DNA of 64,000 bases from Saccostrea cucullata. Its lineage: Eukaryota. The notes beneath the pieces are model-generated. The model was not told where the DNA came from. It searched no databases and saw nothing but the letters and a program-made list of their open reading frames with translations. The position numbers were made by a program, and so were the translations under genes. The DNA is taken from positions 1 through 64,000 of the forward strand of contig NW_026938156.1 of NCBI RefSeq assembly GCF_032062105.1, given 5' to 3'. Shown here one piece after another: positions 47,301-55,469 of this stretch. Within the stretch, counting starts at the first letter, position 1; each line of letters begins with the position of its first letter.

Positions 47301-48247
47301 TATACACCAGGGTAGATGTAAGTGTTGCTGGTTATACATCAGGGTAGATGTAAGTGTTGCTGGTTATACATCAGGGTAGATGTAAGTGTTGCTGGTTATA
47401 CACCAGGGTAGATGTAAGTGTTGCTGGTTATACACCAGGGTAGATGTAAGTGTTGCTGGTTATACATCAGGGTAGATGTAAGTGTTGCTGGTTATACACC
47501 AGGGTAGATGTAAGTAATGCTGGTTATACACCAGGGTAGATGTAAGTGATGCTAGTTATACATCAGGGTAGATGTAAGTGATGCTAGTTATACACCAGGG
47601 TAGATGTAAGTGATGCTGGTTATACACCAGGGTAGATGTAAGTGTTGCTGGTTATACACCAGGGTAGATGTAAGTGTTGCTGGTTATACACCAGGGTAGA
47701 TGTAAGTGTTGCTGGTTATACACCAGGGTAGATGTAAGTGTTGCTGGTTATACATCAGGGTAGATGTAAGTGTTGCTGGTTATACACCAGGGTAGATGTA
47801 AGTGTTGCTGGTTATACATCAGGGTAGATGTAAGTGTTGCTGGTTATACATCAGGGTAGATGTAAGTGATGCTGGTTATACACCAGGGTAGATGTAAGTG
47901 TTGCTGGTTATACATCAGGGTAGATGTAAGTGTTGCTGGTTATACACCAGGGTAGATGTAAGTGTTGCTGGTTATACACCAGGGTAGATGTAAGTGTTGC
48001 TGGTTATACATCAGGGAAGATGTACGTGTTGCTGGTTATACATCAGGGTAGATGTAAGTGATGCTGGTTATACACCAGGGTAGATGCAAGTAATGCTGGT
48101 TATACACCAGGGTAGATGTAAGTGTTGCTGGTTATACATCAGGGTAGATGTAAGTGTTGCTGGTTATACACCAGGGTAGATGTAAGTAATGCTGGTTATA
48201 CATCAGGGTAGATGTAAGTGATGCTGGTTATACACTAGGGTGGATGT
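44394..48247 (+). repeat. Tandem array of a 32-bp unit, 120 copies plus 14 bp
   Basis: Consensus ACCAGGGTAGATGTAAGTGTTGCTGGTTATAC; phase is kept from 44394 to 48234 (3840 = 120 x 32); only substitution variants seen. Confidence 0.98.
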
Positions 48248-48899
48248 AGCTCTTTTGCTGTTGCGCTTTTCCAACGCCTCGTATCTATCAGGGTTTTCCT
48301 GTCTGCAACAAAAGAACGAACCATAAAATATCTAAAACGAGTATACTAAAAGAATACCAAGACTTTATGTTTGAATACTAAAAGAATACCAAGACTTTAA
48401 GTTTTCAGGAAATAAAGGCTTTAATTCTATGTTTAAGGAGGGTCTATCTTTAAATAAGAAAAAAAGTGTTTTAAGACTTTAAACTTAACGTAGAACCTAC
48501 GTCGTATGACATCATAACTAGTGAATGTGTTTAGCCTGTTCTAGATCCATTATGACGTCATAATTAATTCAATGTCATTTCCCGTACTTTACAGCTTCAG
48601 TATAGAAATGATAGAAAATACTGCATTTTGAAATTCACAGAATTCAATTTAAAATCATGCCGAAATAATCTTCATAATATTCAATTTATATATATTTTTT
48701 TAATATAATGCTTAATGACAATATATTTCTTGAATTAGAGAAACCTGTAGGCACTTTTCATTTAACAGATCTTGACCTTAATTAAGTTGACAAATCCAAG
48801 ACTATATTGTGAGATAAAATTGCCATGTACATGTATACAACAAACTGTAATAATGTAAATGGTATGTAACTATATTTTGAAGGAATGCAAAAATCTTTT

Positions 48900-49109
48900 C
48901 AAAAAATCGTCAGTTGCCAACTAACTGTTATGATTACCAAATACAATCCATATATCAAGGGTTTAAAAAAACGTCTACTCAAACACTGGAACATTTTGCA
49001 AACAGACACAATTTGCAAAGAGTTATTTATCGATGAACCAATAATCGCCTACAGTAAACACAAAAACATAGGCGAAATGATAATTAAGTCACGCTTACAA
49101 ATAGCTTAA
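48900..49109 (+). pseudogene. 3' fragment of a second, divergent Penelope-like RT
   Basis: VMITKYNPYIKGLKKRLLKHWNILQTDTICKELFIDEPIIAYSKHKNIGEMIIKSRLQIA* aligns without gaps to the C-terminus of 50997-52928. Confidence 0.9.
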
Positions 49110-49126
49110 GACTAATACTCAAGGTC

Positions 49127-49254
49127 GGGCTCCTGATGATGGCGGGCCTTAAGAGCAAAAAATCATATTTCTCTTTAAAAACCGCCGAAACACTCTATGC
49201 CTCCATAATAACACTTTATTGAAAAAATCATACGTCGTCTAGAGTGTCGATCCC
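49127..49254 (+). ncRNA. Type I hammerhead ribozyme-like motif, copy 1
   Basis: Stem I GGGCTC/GATCCC; core CTGATGA 49133-49139 plus an extra T; stem II GGCGG/CCGCC; GAAA 49187-49190; stem III CACTCTA/TAGAGTG; GTC cleavage triplet ending at 49248. Confidence 0.8.
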
Positions 49255-49513
49255 TGCTAAATTTATGACAGGCTTGGTTGATTGATGTCTTTTTTCAAAA
49301 TCAGGAGACCCATCGCCAGACCCAAGGAAAACCCCAATAGGACTATAAGTATAACCAGCAACGCAGGAACTATACAATCTATAAGGGTCATCGATATCAA
49401 ACCCAAAGAAGCAGGCCATACTAATTAGTAAATTTTATGCGACTACAGGAAGGAAGTTGTTGATTAAATTAGTGAGAATGTTTAATGTACACTCAATGAG
49501 CATACAATGTATA

Positions 49514-50686
49514 CTGAAAGGAAAAAGAAACGCATAATAGCATTATAGCGAAAAATATTTAACTATGTGGCCGAAAATTAAGAAAATTGGTCAGATGTGT
49601 AATTTGGCTACTGTGCACCAAAATCGCTGATCAAAATTACTCAACCATGAAATGTATGGCGTCACGTATGGGAAGTGATAAAAAGCCAAATACACGTGCA
49701 TGTTGATGATGATATTTTTGTGATCCCATTTTGTAGTGGCAATCGATGCATTAGAGTTACAGACATCGTTTTCCGATATTTGCAGTCAGTATAAATTTCT
49801 TGCAATCATGGTATAGCTGACAGAAGTTACATGGGGTCTAGTAATTGAGTTCCATAAGTGAATAAAAAGGCAACAACATGTTGCTGTGCAGTTTGTTTTT
49901 AAATTTTCAACCAAAAAAGTTTTTTCAATTGTCAGAGAGTAACTTAAAAGGTTTCCAACCAACCATGACGGTGACGTTGGCGCGTAACAACGTCAAATCA
50001 AGATAGGGCTTTTCATCATGCTACCTCGGTTATTGTCAAGTCATTATCACTGACACCGATATTTTTACAGCTGACAGTCAGTCTCATATTTTCACCCTAA
50101 TACTGACAGAAACTCTCTGCTCTAATTTGGTACGCAAGCTTGGCAACTTTACGTCGATTTTACTCTCACACGCGCACGTACGCGCAATATGCGTAATGTT
50201 TTTAGCATGTTCACGCTGAGAAAATGTAGCCAGTGTTTGTCGAGACTTAATTACAAACATGCACGTGTACTAAATCAGCTAGATTCTGTAAATTCTATCC
50301 TAAATCGAAGGTTTGTGACATTCATTGGGCGGGGGGATTTGTTAGCTTTGCAATAACACAGCTACTCTCAACCATTAAGACTATCGTCGGAAGGCTTGAA
50401 TGATAATTCTATGAGAAAGATAAATGCTCTGATGAACTCAATGCACAAGAAAATCAAGGCTGTTACTGATGCGCAAAGGAGATGATGAGAATTTTTATTT
50501 TAATTTGGGGGTATCGACATATCAATTTCAATAACTCAGGAATTATCAGTCAAAGTCACACAAGATTTCGGTTACTTGTTGTTTAAAGTTGGATTAAATT
50601 GTTTGATAACAATACTGGAAAATATATTGGAAATAAAAGTTTTAAATTTATTCAAAAGTTTATTATGCGTTTCTTTTTCCTTTCAG
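49514..50686. mobile_element. TA-flanked non-autonomous TIR element (same family as 9950-12469)
   Basis: TA|CTGAAAGGAAAAAGAAACGCATAATA ... TATTATGCGTTTCTTTTTCCTTTCAG|TA; perfect 26-bp TIR. Confidence 0.92.
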
Positions 50687-50996
50687 TATATTTAACAGTA
50701 CATATGGATATTTTCTTTATTGTTGATGTTTCTAAAATTGTTCATATTTGATATCATTTTCTAAGGCGTGACATAGATCACGTGATACTAATAAATTTAT
50801 ATAACCTATGAAGTTCTATCCGCGCATTAGATTACTACAAAACCCTCTAACTTATCACACTCTGATAACTAGACGGGCCATTGCAGCTAAACTTTTATAA
50901 TCTCTATTACAACGTCAACACGTGTAATAGACGATATTCATTTATTAATTGTAGTCTCAATAATCTACAAACTCAGTATCCATTTCCTCTATTAGA

Positions 50997-52928
50997 ATGG
51001 CAAGGCGATTCAATAGACGGCAAAAAGACAATAAAAGTACTAAACGAATCAAACCATACTTTGCCAACCTCAGACGTATCAAAAAGTGGAAGCACTTAAA
51101 CGACGCACGTAAATACGTCCTCAATTTATCAAAATACCAACTAAATGATAATGAATATGTCCTACTAGCAAAAGGGCTTAAATTCATTCCAACACCTAAA
51201 CAAAAAAACGTTAAGAGGTGCATCCTTAAAGATTTCGACGAGTTTGCTAGAAAATTGAGATGCAAATATCATTTTGATAATGGGGCAGATTCAAAAATCC
51301 TCCCATTTAGAACTTCGTCGGGTTTTCAACCCCCTTACACATGTAGCCTACTTGAAGAATACATTGACAAAACAAAGTTGGAATTATCATCTATCACAAC
51401 CAAAACATTCCAAGACAACCTAACTCATAGCGAAAGAAACGCTCTTTCCTCGCTTAACAACAATCTCAATGTTGTCATTAAAAAAGCGGACAAAAGCAAT
51501 ACTATAGTTATAATGGACAGGAATCAGTACATATCAGAAGCAGAGCGCCAGTTACTCTCAAAGCATTATATGCAAGTTGAAAAGCCAAACTTAATATACT
51601 TGCAAGATCTCATTCAAACAAGAATAAATGACATGCACTCCAGGGTCCCCATAGATAAAATTACTCTACGATTTCTGAAAGAGAAAAATCCGTCACTCAA
51701 ATGCGGCCAATTTTATCTGCTCCCTAAAATACACAAACTTCAAGACAATGTCCGAAATACCCTGATTAATGACCTATGCAGTATCAGACGATTACCACCT
51801 GGGCGGCCAATTATTGCTCAATGCAATACACCAACGAGGAAAATTGGGGCATACAGTGACTACTTTCTTATCCCCATCGTACAAAAACAATTAACTTATA
51901 TCAAGGACACTACTGATTTTATCAATAAGATCGAAGGCTTAGAACTCCCGACTGATGCGTTACTAATCACTTACAATGTAACCAGCATGTATACAAATAT
52001 GGAATTTGAAGAACTACTAAATCCCGTCAGGAATGCTTACAACAACGCGGTTAAAAGCAACTCAGACATCCCGTATCCTGATGTGGACAACTTAATTTTT
52101 CTTCTCAGATGCGTATTAGAAAACAATTACTTTGAATTTAACGGAAAATTCTACAAACAAATCATAGGCTGCAGCATGGGCGCAGTACCTTCCCCGGAAA
52201 TCTCAGACATGAGAATGTACGAAATTACGCAGATTATTGAATCTAAATTTCAACATGTCAACAAAATTCTGTTTCATGGCAGATTTAGGGATGATGGATT
52301 CATAATCTTTAACGGAACAAATGAAGAAATTCTAGAATTTTTTGACATCAGTAACAGCTGTCATAAACATCTTAAATTCACATTTGAAATAGCTCACTCA
52401 TCCGTGAATTTCCTGGACACAACGGTTTACAAAGGCAATAGATTTAATCATTGTCAGAAACTTGATATCAAATCTTACATAAAACCAACTAATAATTTTC
52501 AATATCTTCATAGAAACAGTGCACACAACGTCTCTGTATTTAAAGGTTTCATCAAAGGAGAATGTAAAAGACACTCCAGAAATACTAACGACCCCTCAGT
52601 TCTTAAAACAATTCTACAGAATTTCAAGGGACATCTTTCAAAGAGAGAATATTCTGAGGAAGAAATTAACCCAATAGTCGAAGAAACAACACAGAAGGAA
52701 AGACAACTCTTTTTAAGAAAGAGAGAAAAAACAAATTCAAGTCATTCACACGTCATGGTTACAAAATTTAACCCTCGCGTCAAAGGATTAAAAAAACGGA
52801 TTTTAAAGTACTGGAATATTTTGGAAGCAGACCCAACATGCAAAGATCTATTCAAATCGGAACCCATCATTGCGTATAGTAAGCATAAAAACATCGGAGA
52901 TCTATTGATAAAATCAAGTTTACAATAA
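50997..52928 (+). CDS. Penelope-like element reverse transcriptase, no GIY-YIG endonuclease
   Basis: PLE motifs VLNLS..L..NE..LLAKGLKFIPTP, NLTHSERNAL..L, VIKKADKSNTIVIMD, FYLLPKIHK, PPGRPII, YIKDTTDFI, YNVTSMYTN, NYFEFNGKFYKQIIGCSMG, RFRDD, LKFT and VNFLDT; ends PIIAYSKHKNIGDLLIKSSLQ*. Confidence 0.95.
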   Translation: MARRFNRRQKDNKSTKRIKPYFANLRRIKKWKHLNDARKYVLNLSKYQLNDNEYVLLAKGLKFIPTPKQKNVKRCILKDFDEFARKLRCKYHFDNGADSKILPFRTSSGFQPPYTCSLLEEYIDKTKLELSSITTKTFQDNLTHSERNALSSLNNNLNVVIKKADKSNTIVIMDRNQYISEAERQLLSKHYMQVEKPNLIYLQDLIQTRINDMHSRVPIDKITLRFLKEKNPSLKCGQFYLLPKIHKLQDNVRNTLINDLCSIRRLPPGRPIIAQCNTPTRKIGAYSDYFLIPIVQKQLTYIKDTTDFINKIEGLELPTDALLITYNVTSMYTNMEFEELLNPVRNAYNNAVKSNSDIPYPDVDNLIFLLRCVLENNYFEFNGKFYKQIIGCSMGAVPSPEISDMRMYEITQIIESKFQHVNKILFHGRFRDDGFIIFNGTNEEILEFFDISNSCHKHLKFTFEIAHSSVNFLDTTVYKGNRFNHCQKLDIKSYIKPTNNFQYLHRNSAHNVSVFKGFIKGECKRHSRNTNDPSVLKTILQNFKGHLSKREYSEEEINPIVEETTQKERQLFLRKREKTNSSHSHVMVTKFNPRVKGLKKRILKYWNILEADPTCKDLFKSEPIIAYSKHKNIGDLLIKSSLQ

Positions 52929-52940
52929 ACATGGAATATC

Positions 52941-53072
52941 GTTATTGGGGCCCCTGATAGGCATAATCCGTCGCCGAAACACTCTACTACTACCATTATA
53001 ACTATCATTTTAATCATAACAATATCATCCTATTTCATTCAATGTGGTTTAGAGTGTCAGGGTCCCAATAAC
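52941..53072 (+). ncRNA. Type I hammerhead ribozyme-like motif, copy 2 (variant core)
   Basis: 13-bp stem I GTTATTGGGGCCC/GGGTCCCAATAAC; core CTGATA (G8 missing); stem II GGC/GCC; GAAA 52976-52979; stem III CACTCTA/TAGAGTG; GTC ending at 53058. Confidence 0.72.
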
Positions 53073-55469
53073 TCATTATCAAGTCTGGTTGATTGATGAC
53101 GTTTATGGAAAACATGTAATATCTTGATGAAATGTGTCTAAGTCAAAGATGTACGTGTTGTAGATTGTGTGTACATTTTGTGATATCTATCATGAAATGA
53201 TGTGCATTCGTTTTCATAATTATTTGTTACTTATTCATATTCTTGGAGTTTTATTACAATTTCTCTATTAAATATGATCTTTTAAATTGAAAGTACAATT
53301 TTTATAAACATGTTTAAGCTGAAAGTAGCCCTGAACAGTCATTTAATAATAAAATCCGTGTTAGTGCAAAAAGGTCATGAATATTAGTATCGGTAAATAA
53401 CCTATCTCTCATTAGTTAGAGGGGAAAGGTATATATTTTAATCACTTTTTGTAACCATTTGGGTATGTTATTTATCATATTAAAGATTGAAAACATTGTG
53501 ACAAAGACTTCTGATATATATTTACAAATGTAGGGTGGAAAATTGATTGAAAATAAATAGAGTTCATTTGCCTATAGTTTTGAAAATGTGGACTTATCTT
53601 TCATGTCAATTGAATAAAAAAGAATTTATTCTCGGGAAATATTGTTTAATACTGTTCAATTAATAAACAATAAAAAAAATGATGTTTAAAGAAGCAATTC
53701 TGGGATTTTGTTGTCTTCTTTTCATGACAAGTACCCCTAAAATGACTGAAATTGTGAAGTCGCAATATGTATTTATCATTCCATGTTTAACTGGCTGCAC
53801 TACATTTAATAACAAGGAAACATGTCATGTGCTTTTAACTGATTGATAAGCAAGTGCTTATTTATCATTATGAAAAGTTTGAAAATCTTGTGACAAAGAC
53901 TTCTCCGACGTAGGTTCTACCTTAAGTGAATATGCTTCAAGATAATGATTAAAATCTGGTATCAAAGGTCTACGTCTAAACCATCGACCCTCCATAAAAT
54001 CACTATAGAGTATACTCCTGACTATATCAAAGTTTTTTTTTCTAAGTAATGCTCTTGATCAACATATATAATTAAATGTTTTAAATGGTTACCACTGCAG
54101 CACTCTGAGTAATCTACTTTAGAGTATCCCCCGGCTATATAAAGTGTACGTTTCTGAATAAAATCTTCTTATATTCCAATAATTTCATCTTCATCTGTGT
54201 CATCATTCTTAAAGTTCACCTTTATCTACATTGTTTTAGCCCTCTTCAATGGGGGTAAACGATTCTGTAAAGTGAACTTTTTGCATGGTACAGTTATGTA
54301 CTGAACTTGTACAGAACATTTATTAAGTTTTCTTGCTGTTTAAAATAAACGTAATCTTTTCACCACTACCCATCCTTTACTATATATGTGTCATTGAAGA
54401 TGCTCACAAGAGGTGGACTAGGCGGTACCGACAAATTTCTGGTAGATTCATTGTAGCTTTCAGATTCTTAGTTGTTCTCATCTTGACATGGAATACATCC
54501 TCAGATAAAGAGACCTGCATTCCTCTAATGTTATCAAATAAAAAGAATTTATAGTCTAATTATAAGATAGGTATGATATTCATGTTAATGAATATCCCCT
54601 TATTCGCCTATTGATCGTCAGACTTAAAACGTTACGGGTGAACTCATCATGCTATTATTTTTATCAAATAGTCATGTGCTCATCATTTCATATGTATTTG
54701 TTTTTATTGAATAGCCTCCAAAAATTATTTTTTTCTGTTTAGATATTGTAAATTTTAAACATTGTATTTTTGCAGTTTATATTTTTAAACAAAGCAAGAA
54801 AAATTTAAGGTAGCTGTGGGAACATTCTGATTACACGTTTTTTGTGCAATTCGAGCTAAAGTATATCTTTAAAAATATCAACTTGGTGGTTCCAGAAAGG
54901 GAAAGGGTCTGGAGACGGGGACCATGCCACATACTGAGGGTGGAACCTTCCTTTGAAAACTATTATTAATAGATCCCCCTCTTGAAAATCAAAATAAGTG
55001 GTAAAACCTCTTTTAAAAAATCAGGGGACCACCTCTGTAGATGATTAGTATACATTCACCCCGAGTAAAACAAACATATACAAAACGACAATGAAACATA
55101 CCTTGTTAATGTACGTAAACTACGAAAACTGAATTGCATTGAGCCCCCTCATGTAAGTTTCACCCACTCGTATCACGTACTGCGGAAATTTTCCATCACC
55201 GCCTATCTCGGCGTCAAAGCGAATGTCTGCTGCGGCCAAATCAGTCGTGTTATCTTTTAAATTCTTCTAGGAAACATTCACTGTATTATCAGCCAAAGAG
55301 ATAGTATTGTGCAATATACATGATTTAAAGAATTCTTATGTTCTTACGTATATCGCTTGGATTCGAGATTCAATAACATTAGACTAAGGTCGACAGCGTG
55401 GACGGTGAGAAAGATGCGGTGGATTAAGACTGTTTTAACGATGTTAGCCTGTGGTGCTGCAAAGAAGCA

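What the first reader, a model, noticed from the sequence alone, without database searches (positions are those of the whole stretch)
50997..53100. Endonuclease-less Penelope-like RT with an uninterrupted ORF and a 3' hammerhead
Seen: a 643-aa ORF with the full PLE N-terminal, RT and thumb motifs stops right after PIIAYSKHKNIGDLLIKSSLQ, and a hammerhead fold starts 13 nt after the stop. Known: in Penelope/Neptune-type elements this linker-like motif precedes a C-terminal GIY-YIG domain, Naiad/Chlamys/Hydra place it N-terminally, and Athena/Coprina lack it and act at chromosome ends. No GIY-YIG is visible at either end here. The divergent sister fragment at 48900-49109 stops at essentially the same residue and is also followed by a hammerhead. 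Inference: the loss is a family trait rather than a truncation of this copy, pointing to an RT-only, ribozyme-punctuated PLE lineage at an interstitial site in a mollusc.
Basis: partly seen in the sequence, partly recalled or inferred. Interest (0 to 1): 0.8.

Follow-up and report, generated by a model that had tools for sequence, protein, structure and literature searches.

The report
Nuclease-less Penelope retroelement with hammerhead
This oyster sequence is a dead copy of an abundant jumping gene that encodes only a reverse transcriptase followed by a self-cutting RNA, and lacks the DNA-cutting enzyme such elements normally need to insert inside chromosomes.

Summary
Window 50997-52928 is an intact 643-aa Penelope-like (PLE) reverse transcriptase ORF. 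It stops exactly where co-resident nuclease-bearing PLEs continue into a Zn-finger linker and GIY-YIG domain. A type I hammerhead begins 13 nt after the stop.

The missing nuclease is a lineage trait. All scored copies in this Saccostrea-like genome, in three subfamilies about 64% identical in protein, stop at that residue. So do Pinctada, Mytilus and Argopecten homologues. In RT trees they form a well-supported clade with no nuclease-bearing member. Complete tandem units (3496, 2884 and 2566 bp) and the whole window hold no GIY-YIG in any frame.

The hammerhead is conserved with compensatory changes. It has a long helix III, unlike the minimal hammerheads of animal PLEs. DNA copies that begin exactly at the predicted cleavage site suggest it cuts in vivo.

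This particular copy is dead:
- The RT motif-A Asp is Asn.
- Hammerhead G8 is deleted.
- The copy is 5'-truncated and carries a MITE.
- It shows no poly(A)+ reads.

It is half of a 4190-bp head-to-tail composite inserted in another repeat without a target duplication.

Nuclease loss inside PLE clades has precedent (MjPLE01). This scan found the same lineage earlier on other DNA (s1-700955).

The parts
48925..49302 (+). Upstream partial PLE copy of a different subfamily. It holds the RT C-terminal remnant (to 49109), a hammerhead (core 49133-49139 and 49187-49191, cleavage C 49248) and a tail with the GGTTGATTGATGTC motif, ending at about 49302.
   Evidence: It is 70% identical in DNA to 52752-52925. 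The peptide aligns to the RT C-terminus. The 5' edge at 48925 is set by RNA reads of 'empty' host copies that join 48924 to 53115. The tail end was aligned to 53086-53114 (D6).
49303..49509 (+). 5' region of the main copy: the 3' part of a degenerate ORF1-like region. The copy is 5'-truncated here, lacking about 875 bp of the full 3496-bp unit.
   Evidence: It matches the stretch directly upstream of the 5' UTR in the tandem array on C21980. A 147-aa open frame is present there but not here.
49510..50690 (.). Secondary insertion of a MITE-like DNA transposon with 30-bp perfect terminal inverted repeats. It is not part of the PLE.
   Evidence: Inverted repeat I1. It is absent from other copies, where 49512 abuts 50689. 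RNA reads from other MITE copies break off exactly at 49510 and 50690/50691.
50691..50996 (+). 5' untranslated region of the main PLE copy.
   Evidence: It is 93-99% identical to the same region in L002/L048, L004 and L045.
50997..52928 (+). RT-only ORF of 643 aa with PLE N-terminal motifs, RT motifs and thumb, and a TAA stop at 52926-52928. Codon 51975-51977 (AAT) puts Asn where all relatives have the motif-A catalytic Asp.
   Evidence: dN/dS against the closest copy is 0.90.
52941..53072 (+). Type I hammerhead ribozyme. Helix I is 52941-52953 / 53060-53072. The core at 52954-52960 reads CTGATAG (G8 missing). Helix II is 52960-52962 / 52973-52975. GAAA is 52976-52979. Helix III is 52979-52986 / 53050-53057 and closes a 63-nt loop. 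The cleavage C is 53058, followed by an aberrant extra A at 53059.
   Evidence: Other copies have the canonical core. Helices covary between subfamilies and species.
53060..53114 (+). The 55-nt 'tail' between the hammerhead cleavage site and the 3' end of the element. It contains the conserved GGYTGATTGATG motif (53087-53098), the likely RT recognition or initiation site.
   Evidence: The 3' end is common to all subfamily-A copies. The empty-site joint lies at 53115. Solo tails elsewhere start exactly at the first G.

Best explanation
The window holds a decayed copy of an endonuclease-less Penelope-like retrotransposon. The lineage is large, old and abundant in pteriomorph bivalves.

A unit consists of a 5' region (in this subfamily with a coiled-coil-like ORF1), one ORF encoding only the PLE reverse transcriptase, a full monomeric type I hammerhead placed 0-13 nt after the stop codon, and a roughly 55-nt tail.

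Shown: the RT ends precisely at the RT/linker boundary of nuclease-bearing PLEs. No GIY-YIG exists anywhere in complete units. Copies are dispersed at non-telomeric sites, often as tandem or inverted arrays. The ORF has been under purifying selection across subfamilies. The hammerhead is conserved with compensatory changes.

Inferred from DNA fossils: the hammerhead cuts element RNA in vivo. The RT starts cDNA synthesis internally, at the tail about 55 nt 3' of the cleavage site, as shown biochemically for the anole PLE PAc. The RT then jumps between template RNAs, including RNAs of different subfamilies. This builds head-to-tail composites such as 48925-53114.

Inferred only: having no nuclease of its own, the RT primes on 3'-OH ends it does not make, such as chromosomal nicks, breaks or replication intermediates. 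The missing target-site duplication and a 4-nt target loss at this locus fit that reading.

This copy itself is inactive. Its RT motif-A Asp is Asn, hammerhead G8 is deleted, it is 5'-truncated and MITE-disrupted, it is evolving neutrally, and it is not seen in poly(A)+ RNA.
For: - **ORF and stop position:**. Alignment with same-genome nuclease-bearing PLEs (932 and 796 aa) shows the shared PPLAAYRRPRNLKDMVVRTRL / EPIIAYSKHKNIGDLLIKSSLQ motif. After it only the former continue, into a CX5CxxC linker plus GIY-YIG/CCHH.
- **Family trait:** all 69 scored matches of 4109 candidates stop at residue 642/643. Subfamilies A, B and C end 0-5 aa after the motif. None of the 120 best database homologues carries PF01541. 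These include Saccostrea, Pinctada, Mytilus and Argopecten proteins.
- **Wider survey:** of 252 relatives, 131 stop within 12 aa of the motif. The 29 that continue more than 80 aa all carry the nuclease.
- **No nuclease in any frame:** this holds for the 64-kb window, 29 copy loci, the full units of A (3496 bp), C (2884 bp) and Mytilus (2566 bp), and Pinctada +/-5 kb. Controls scored 1e-29 to 1e-94. Pfam PF01541 hits the control but not the RT-only ORFs.
- **Trees:** a 102-row clade with support 99 has no nuclease-bearing member. A 30-row clade has SH-aLRT 100 under LG+C20, and only 2 state changes are needed.
- **Hammerhead:** the canonical CTGATGAG...GAAAC core is present in every other copy, and helix II/III changes are compensatory across A, B, C, Pinctada and Mytilus. 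Unconstrained MFE folds give the three-way junction, with z = -5.1 for subfamily A.
- **In-vivo cleavage and template jumps:** three DNA segments start exactly at G+1 of the cleavage site.
- **Selection:** pS is about 0.8 against pN of about 0.23 between subfamilies. dN/dS is 0.90 for window versus L002.
- **Interstitial location:** no telomere repeats occur in the window or any locus. Flanks are diverse.
- **Insertion boundaries:** the empty-site joints 48924>53115 have ATAG between them.
- **Internal initiation precedent:** PMC11167929.
Against: - The source of the priming 3'-OH is not shown. Only one insertion site could be resolved to the nucleotide.
- The trees are unrooted (no TERT, Athena or Coprina references were available). 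Secondary loss and ancestral absence therefore cannot be told apart.
- No reference sequences of the named clades could be included, so clade naming is open.
- No RNA evidence exists for this subfamily: depth was 0 in three oligo-dT runs. A hammerhead-processed RNA without poly(A) would be missed by such libraries anyway.
- Rfam does not recognise the hammerhead.
- A nuclease exon split into pieces shorter than 20 aa would escape the six-frame scan.
- Repbase and Dfam could not be consulted, so the family may already be catalogued.
Confidence: 0.8

Rival explanations
1. The RT-only elements are nuclease-dependent parasites. They insert at nicks made in trans by the GIY-YIG domain of co-resident nuclease-bearing (Neptune-like) PLEs rather than at spontaneous DNA ends.
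For: The same genome holds many intact C-terminal nuclease-bearing PLE ORFs of 796-944 aa. There are 1458 GIY-YIG candidates, and all 150 scored were over the Pfam cut-off. The RT-only elements show the typical PLE insertion architecture: tandem, inverted head-to-head, 5'-truncated, with a tail.
Against: The RTs are only about 33-37% identical to the nearest nuclease-bearing relatives. PLE nucleases normally act as part of the RT polyprotein. The one insertion resolved here has no target-site duplication and a 4-nt target loss. The RT-only clade is as deep and diverse as the nuclease-bearing ones, which suggests a self-sufficient strategy.
Confidence: 0.25
2. An 'autonomous retrozyme'. Hammerhead cleavage of tandem transcripts yields unit-length RNAs that are ligated into circles. 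Rolling-circle reverse transcription makes concatemeric cDNA, which host repair integrates, giving the tandem arrays.
For: Arrays have unit-length periods with one hammerhead per unit (2884, 3496 and 2566 bp). The Mytilus array copies are identical. The ribozyme is a full monomeric type I hammerhead, like those of circRNA-forming metazoan retrozymes (PMC7229834). An extra A sits exactly at the scissile bond of the window copy, as expected for an end-to-end template jump or an imprecise rejoining.
Against: No circular RNA or back-joined read was observed. Reads were absent for this subfamily. Composites of different subfamilies need template switching between separate RNAs rather than one circle. 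Arrays can also grow by unequal recombination. In the anole PLE, hammerhead cleavage is dispensable for insertion in vitro (PMC11167929).
Confidence: 0.25
3. The lineage is an animal branch of the ancestrally nuclease-less Coprina-type PLEs that has left the telomeres. It is not a secondary loss within a nuclease-bearing clade.
For: In the unrooted tree all RT-only rows sit on one side of a single branch. Their hammerhead has a large helix III and works as a single unit, as reported for nuclease-deficient fungal and protist PLEs. Nuclease-bearing metazoan PLEs carry minimal dimeric hammerheads (PMC4209133). Neptune and Coprina cluster together in published trees (PMC8557442).
Against: No Coprina, Athena or TERT sequences could be placed in the tree. 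No reverse-complement telomeric repeats occur at the 3' end and the location is not telomeric. The nearest nuclease-bearing relatives have the Neptune-type CX2-5CxxC linker. The ORF also stops exactly at the RT/linker boundary, which fits a clean loss equally well.
Confidence: 0.35
4. The missing nuclease is an accident of this copy or of the assembly: a nonsense mutation, a deletion, or a separate or spliced nuclease exon nearby.
For: The copy is demonstrably damaged in other respects.
Against: The same stop position recurs in dozens of intact copies, three subfamilies and at least four bivalve genera. The element ends 186 nt after the stop. Complete units and flanks have no nuclease in six frames. 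The stop is TAA, so selenocysteine recoding does not apply.
Confidence: 0.02

Closest known systems
Neptune-type C-terminal nuclease-bearing Penelope-like elements (including the 932-aa family in this same genome)
   Same: They share the PLE N-terminal motifs (GLKF-type GxKF/Y, ADK-x), RT motifs and thumb, and the terminal ...AY..(K/R)N(I/L)xDxh(I/V)(K/R)(S/A)xL motif. They also share the tandem, inverted and 5'-truncated insertion architecture and a 3' tail beyond the ribozyme.
   Different: The ORF stops where Neptune continues for about 155 aa into the CX2-5CxxC linker and the GIY-YIG/CCHH nuclease. DKG is replaced by DKS. The hammerhead is a full monomeric type I motif instead of the minimal dimeric form described for metazoan PLEs (PMC4209133). 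RT identity is only about 33-37%.
MjPLE01, the Neptune-like nuclease-minus PLE of the kuruma shrimp (cited in PMC8557442)
   Same: It is a metazoan PLE without a nuclease that groups near nuclease-bearing families. It is the published precedent that nuclease loss occurs and can be tolerated.
   Different: It is described as a single family in one crustacean. Here the trait defines a deep, species-rich clade, with more than 100 clusters at 50% identity across several bivalve genera, thousands of genomic matches and tandem arrays. No sequence comparison with MjPLE01 was possible.
Athena and Coprina nuclease-minus PLEs
   Same: They have no nuclease, a hammerhead near the 3' end and, for fungal and protist Coprina, a large helix III that is active as a monomer (PMC4209133).
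   Different: Those elements sit at or near telomeres. They carry short reverse-complement telomeric repeats that anneal to G-rich overhangs (PMC8557442). The bivalve elements have unrelated 3' termini (...TTTATGGAAAAC...TTTTCACAC). They have no telomeric repeats and diverse internal flanks.
Metazoan non-LTR retrozymes (PMC7229834; bioRxiv 10.64898/2026.07.22.740005)
   Same: They have a type I hammerhead once per tandem unit, and unit-length RNAs are expected after self-cleavage. Mussels carry thousands of them and they are thought to be mobilised by PLEs.
   Different: Retrozymes are 170-400 nt and non-coding. These units are 2.6-3.5 kb and encode their own RT. Whether this lineage is the autonomous partner of bivalve retrozymes was not tested.
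PAc (Poseidon of Anolis carolinensis), the only PLE reconstituted in vitro (PMC11167929)
   Same: Copies end at a fixed point downstream of the hammerhead cleavage site. That implies internal initiation of reverse transcription and gives the PLE 'tail' signature.
   Different: PAc nicks DNA with its own GIY-YIG domain. Its hammerhead and initiation site lie at the start of the ORF, so a full ORF needs a tandem. Here both lie after the stop codon, so a single unit carries the whole ORF.

Membership tests
Penelope-like elements (PLE) | RT with PLE-specific N-terminal motifs, core RT motifs and thumb, homologous to bona fide PLE RTs | tested here: met
   It aligns over the full length with GIY-YIG-bearing PLE ORFs of the same genome. 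Homologues carry DUF8422 + HTH_animal + RVT_1. Local Pfam gives only a weak RVT_1 hit.
Penelope-like elements (PLE) | Hammerhead ribozyme motif in the terminal (pseudo-LTR) region | tested here: met
   The core is canonical in all copies but this one, the helices covary and MFE folds give the three-way junction. Rfam models miss it.
Penelope-like elements (PLE) | Tandem or partial-tandem and inverted arrangements, 5' truncation, and a 3' tail beyond the ribozyme | tested here: met
   Arrays on many contigs. Head-to-tail composites and inverted pairs. A Mytilus array. A fixed 3' end 55 nt past the cleavage site.
Canonical nuclease-bearing PLEs (Penelope/Poseidon, Neptune, Nematis, Hydra) | C-terminal GIY-YIG endonuclease fused to the RT | tested here: not met
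   The ORF stops at the RT/linker boundary. No nuclease HMM or PF01541 hit occurs in the ORF, units or flanks, while controls are positive.
Naiad / Chlamys | N-terminal GIY-YIG domain (220-275 aa) linked by a CxC motif, plus an IFD in the RT | tested here: not met
   The ORF starts about 40 aa before the first PLE N-terminal motif. No nuclease lies upstream in any frame of complete units. The IFD was not examined. These clades also lack canonical hammerheads (PMC8557442), whereas this family has one.
Athena / Coprina (telomeric nuclease-minus PLEs) | Absence of a nuclease | tested here: met
Athena / Coprina (telomeric nuclease-minus PLEs) | Telomeric or subtelomeric location and reverse-complement telomeric repeats at the 3' end | tested here: not met
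   No (TTAGGG)n or (CCCTAA)n occurs in the window or in any of about 50 loci. The 3' termini are unrelated to telomere repeats and the flanks differ at every locus. The copy here lies inside another interspersed repeat.
Athena / Coprina (telomeric nuclease-minus PLEs) | Phylogenetic placement of the RT within those clades | not testable with these tools
   No named reference sequences could be brought in.
Non-LTR retrozymes | Short (170-400 nt) non-coding tandem units with a type I hammerhead | tested here: not met
   Units are 2566-3496 bp and encode a 643-648 aa RT.

The most novel reading that the evidence does not exclude
The bivalve RT-only clade is a self-sufficient 'autonomous retrozyme'. 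In this reading it is a PLE superfamily that replicates through hammerhead-processed, possibly circular, RNA. It integrates at internal chromosomal sites with no element-encoded nuclease, and it is the long-sought RT source that mobilises the thousands of non-coding type I hammerhead retrozymes of mussels and oysters.
Probability: 0.2. Interest if true: 0.85.

Novelty: new variant of a known kind. Interest (0 to 1): 0.58.

Why it matters
The textbook rule for Penelope-like elements is that a GIY-YIG nuclease is what allows insertion inside chromosomes. Nuclease-less PLEs are held to be confined to chromosome ends, where they bind exposed telomeric overhangs.

This lineage lacks the nuclease yet is old, diverse, under purifying selection and present in thousands of matches at internal sites in bivalve genomes. 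If it mobilises itself, PLE reverse transcriptases, the closest relatives of telomerase, can find or exploit internal 3'-OH ends without a dedicated nuclease. That bears on how telomerase-like enzymes and retroelements relate, and on nuclease-independent retrotransposition in general.

The lineage also offers a natural system in which hammerhead cleavage, internal initiation and template jumping have left readable scars in DNA. Its full-size monomeric hammerhead links autonomous PLEs to metazoan retrozymes. For genome annotation, these ORFs are currently labelled 'uncharacterized protein' in RefSeq oyster and mussel genomes.

Tried and rejected
- **Rfam:** scans at gathering threshold and at E up to 10 on the window, and E up to 1 on canonical copies from oyster, Pinctada and Mytilus, found no hammerhead. 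Large loops in helix II/III defeat the models. I did not take this as evidence against the ribozyme.
- **Local Pfam:** it gave only a sub-threshold RVT_1 hit.
- **PDB sequence search:** nothing at E up to 1.
- **ESM Atlas look-alikes:** these were generic PLE clusters and did not resolve taxonomy.
- **The listing of cluster members:** it gave no organism names for divergent clade members.
- **RNA reads:** zero depth over the PLE in three oligo-dT runs, so transcription, cleavage ends and circles could not be assessed. Metatranscriptome contigs cover it thinly but may be DNA.
- **N-terminal nuclease signal:** an apparent hit in P0008 (12.8 bits) aligns the YIDKTK...ADKSNT region to the nuclease HMM. 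It recurs weakly in all RT-only ORFs. I judged it chance similarity.
- **ORF1 in subfamilies B and C:** none was found. The 144-aa frame in C runs through the hammerhead and looks non-coding.
- **Target-site duplications:** inspection of three further junctions by eye was inconclusive.
- **Minimal hammerheads in the nuclease-bearing loci:** a crude regex search found none and was not pursued.
- **Literature:** Gladyshev & Arkhipova 2007 and the supplements of Craig et al. 2021 are not held. Repbase and Dfam cannot be queried.
- **Domesticated host RT gene:** rejected on copy number, arrays and neutral decay of this copy.

Full report
**Observation**

The ORF listing gives an uninterrupted 643-aa ORF at 50997..52928 (+) ending ...PIIAYSKHKNIGDLLIKSSLQ. 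It also gives a 74-aa frame at 48885..49109 ending ...IIAYSKHKNIGEMIIKSRLQIA. Both are followed by a hammerhead-like motif.

In the main copy, helix I starts at 52941, 13 nt after the TAA. The parts are:
- Helix I: 52941-52953 pairs with 53060-53072.
- Helix II: GGC/GCC.
- Helix III: ACACTCTA/TAGAGTGT, closing a 63-nt loop.
- Cleavage-site C: 53058.

Rfam reports nothing at gathering threshold or at E up to 10. It also misses the canonical versions in other copies and species, because of the long loops. The motif therefore rests on the evidence given under "The ribozyme" below.

**What the protein is**

Local Pfam gives only a sub-threshold RVT_1 hit. The ORF nevertheless aligns end to end with bona fide PLE ORFs taken from the same genome. 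These are 932-944 aa and 796 aa, and they carry GIY-YIG (PF01541, 38.6 bits).

The alignment includes the GLKF motif, an ADK(S) motif in place of DKG, RT motifs and the thumb. The terminal motif EPIIAYSKHKNIGDLLIKSSLQ aligns with PPLAAYRRPRNLKDMVVRTRL of the nuclease-bearing ORFs. Those then continue about 155 aa through a CX5CxxC linker and a GIY-YIG/CCHH domain, while the window ORF stops.

One background statement is not. Hydra PLEs have a C-terminal nuclease, not an N-terminal one (PMC8557442).

**Family trait versus truncation**

A six-frame search of the window's own assembly (1.17 Gb) found 4109 candidates. All 69 scored matches end at query residue 642/643, and many have no internal stop.

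They fall into at least three subfamilies: A (643 aa, this copy), B (648 aa) and C (646 aa). The subfamilies are about 64% identical in protein. All end 0-5 residues after the motif.

The best database hit (96%) is an 'uncharacterized protein' of Saccostrea cucullata. Further homologues of 640-650 aa come from Pinctada, Mytilus, Saccostrea echinata and Argopecten. None of the 120 best carries PF01541. Two longer relatives (831 and 864 aa) differ by an N-terminal coiled-coil extension and also stop at ...LKDILVRAKL.

The exhaustive representative search returned 20,527 relatives. I classified the 252 proteins in hand with a nuclease HMM built from this genome's own PLE nucleases:

| Class | Number | Nuclease |
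|---|---|---|
| Stop within 12 aa of the motif | 131 | none |
| Short tail of 13-80 aa | 18 | none |
| Continue more than 80 aa | 29 | all carry it |

**No hidden nuclease**

The same HMM, run over all six frames, found nothing above noise in any of these:
- the entire 64-kb window;
- 29 copy loci;
- the complete tandem units of subfamily A (3496 bp, C21980) and subfamily C (2884 bp);
- subfamily B loci;
- the Mytilus edulis array (2566-bp period);
- 5 kb either side of the Pinctada copy.

Positive controls scored 1e-29 to 1e-94. The element ends 186 nt after the stop, and the stop is TAA. Neither a downstream domain nor selenocysteine read-through is possible.

**Phylogeny**

A FastTree of 155 near-full-length RTs gives a 102-row clade (support 99) made only of RT-only proteins or proteins with short non-nuclease tails.

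An IQ-TREE (LG+C20, SH-aLRT) of 56 representatives gives a 30-row RT-only clade at 100. Together with the N-terminally extended RT-only group, it forms one side of a branch. All 21 nuclease-bearing proteins sit on the other side, and two state changes suffice.

The tree is unrooted and lacks named references. Loss from a Neptune-like ancestor and ancestral absence (Coprina-like) cannot be separated. The nearest nuclease-bearing relatives do have the Neptune-type CX2-5CxxC linker.

Between subfamilies, synonymous sites are saturated (pS about 0.8) while pN is about 0.23. The RT has therefore been under purifying selection.

**The ribozyme**

Every other copy of A, B and C, plus the Pinctada and Mytilus copies, has the canonical CTGATGAG...CGAAAC core 0-13 nt after the stop. 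The helices change in a compensatory way:

| Helix | Variants |
|---|---|
| II | GGC/GCC (A); GGCGG/CCGCC (B, Pinctada, the window's upstream fragment); GGCT/AGCC (C); GGTAG/CTACC (Mytilus) |
| III | ACACTCTA/TAGAGTGT (A); ACACTCTT/AAGAGTGT (B); ACACGAA/TTTGTGT (Mytilus) |

Unconstrained MFE folding reproduces the three-way junction for A (z = -5.1), C and Pinctada.

Helix III is 7-8 bp, so this is a monomeric type I hammerhead. According to Cervera & de la Pena 2014, metazoan PLEs carry minimal, dimer-dependent hammerheads. Nuclease-deficient fungal and protist PLEs carry variants with a large helix III that cleave as monomers (PMC4209133). The bivalve family resembles the latter.

**Fossil evidence for how it works**

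All subfamily-A copies end at the same base (window 53113/53114), 55 nt beyond the cleavage site. A conserved GGYTGATTGATG motif sits in that tail. [quoted passage not shown]

At the start of the C21980 array, the sense strand reads in this order:
1. a subfamily B/C-type 3' terminus (...ATTTTCACAC);
2. tt;
3. GGGTCCC...GGAAAAC;
4. a;
5. GGGTCCC...GGAAAAC;
6. the unit 5' start.

Another locus holds a solo 55-nt tail in unrelated DNA. These three segments begin exactly at the first nucleotide after the predicted scissile bond.

I read this as follows. The hammerhead cuts in vivo. The RT copies cleaved RNAs to their 5' end, adds one or two extra nucleotides and jumps to the initiation site of another RNA, even one of a different subfamily. 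This reading is an inference. It is supported by three independent junctions among the 40 distinct sequence contexts of this motif examined.

**Anatomy of the window locus**

RNA reads from other, 'empty' copies of the surrounding repeat join 48924 directly to 53115, with ATAG between. The inserted block is therefore 48925-53114. There is no target-site duplication, and four host bases are missing. The block has these parts:

| Coordinates | Content |
|---|---|
| 48925-49302 | Partial copy of another subfamily (70% DNA identity). Its 'ATG' at 48885 is host DNA. |
| 49303 onward | Subfamily-A copy abutting head to tail. It is truncated inside the ORF1-like region and lacks about 875 bp of the 3496-bp unit. 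|
| 49510-50690 | Later MITE insertion with 30-bp perfect inverted repeats. |

The closest relative (C16788, 98% identical in DNA) has the same kind of partial-copy-plus-longer-copy arrangement. Inverted head-to-head pairs occur elsewhere. No telomeric repeats occur in the window or in any fetched locus.

**State of this copy**

Despite the open frame, codon 51975-51977 encodes Asn where all relatives have the motif-A catalytic Asp. The hammerhead has lost G8 and carries an extra A at the scissile position. dN/dS against its closest relative is 0.90. Three oligo-dT RNA-seq runs show zero depth across 50763-53027. It is a fossil, not an active element.

**Mechanism, committed**

I consider it most likely (about 0.8) that this is a genuine nuclease-less PLE lineage that follows the ordinary PLE RNA cycle: tandem or read-through transcription, hammerhead processing, internal initiation at the tail and template jumping.

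How it obtains a primer is not shown. My ranking is:
- pre-existing nicks, breaks or replication intermediates: about 0.45. The junction without a duplication fits, by analogy with nuclease-independent L1 insertion;
- nicks made in trans by the abundant co-resident nuclease-bearing PLEs: about 0.25-0.3;
- circular-RNA rolling-circle cDNA integrated by host repair: about 0.25.

**Novelty**

Craig et al. [quoted passage not shown] The principle is therefore known.

Three things appear new relative to the papers I could read:
- the scale: a deep, diverse, high-copy, interstitial clade across bivalve genera;
- its full monomeric hammerhead directly after the stop codon;
- the DNA scars of cleavage and template jumping.

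Full-text searches found no paper describing nuclease-less PLEs in oysters or bivalves. Repbase and Dfam could not be checked.

The scan itself has already reported this lineage from another piece of the same genome (s1-700955, s1-721898). Those notes agree with my independent tests.

I did not build a family consensus (see referred steps).

Noticed in passing
window 49510-50690: A 1181-bp MITE-like element with 30-bp perfect terminal inverted repeats (TATACTGAAAGG...), flanked by TA, is inserted into the PLE 5' region. Many diverged copies are represented in poly(A)+ RNA, and reads break off exactly at its ends.
   Followed up: partly
window 48000-48924 and 53115-53940: The PLE composite sits inside another interspersed repeat. 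That repeat has 32-bp tandem repeats (48000-48280, with an echo at 53146-53160) and 35-nt inverted repeats at 48470-48504 / 53906-53940. 'Empty' copies of it are transcribed (joints 48924>53115). This matches the other first-stage note about a DNA-transposon shell.
   Followed up: partly
L004:3684-4124 (-), L045:8770-9523 (-): Full-length subfamily-A units carry an upstream ORF1-like region. A 147-aa open frame is preceded by a 107-aa frame with an acidic N-terminus and looks coiled-coil-like. It has no Pfam match. Subfamilies B and C (2884-bp units) show no such ORF.
   Followed up: partly
P0115, P0119, P0129, P0140 (database proteins): A sister group of RT-only PLE proteins has the coiled-coil region fused as a 250-aa N-terminal extension. 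These proteins also stop at ...LKDILVRAKL.
   Followed up: no
P0124, P0128, P0136, P0144, P0159, P0163, P0164 (database proteins): Some basal RT-only members replace the nuclease with a short acidic C-terminal tail. The tail has a recurring (D/E)xLDxLIxLL-type motif of unknown role.
   Followed up: no
L051:5001-11944 (Mytilus edulis): A tandem array of RT-only units with a 2566-bp period. Two complete ORFs are identical at every codon, which suggests very recent amplification or homogenisation. Here the large loop is in helix II and helix III is a 7-bp hairpin.
   Followed up: partly
window 53087-53098; same position in L003-L030, L050: A GGYTGATTGATG motif about 30 nt after the cleavage site is more conserved across subfamilies and in Pinctada than its surroundings. 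It is a candidate RT binding or initiation signal.
   Followed up: no
window ORF residues about 120-200; P0008:24-102: There is weak (7-13 bit) similarity between the GIY-YIG/linker HMM and the PLE N-terminal YIDKTK...ADKSNT...EAxRQL region in all RT-only ORFs. It is probably chance.
   Followed up: partly
G000 contigs listed: The genome holds many intact C-terminal nuclease-bearing PLE ORFs (796 and 932-944 aa), often in inverted pairs a few kb apart. They co-exist with the RT-only lineage.
   Followed up: partly
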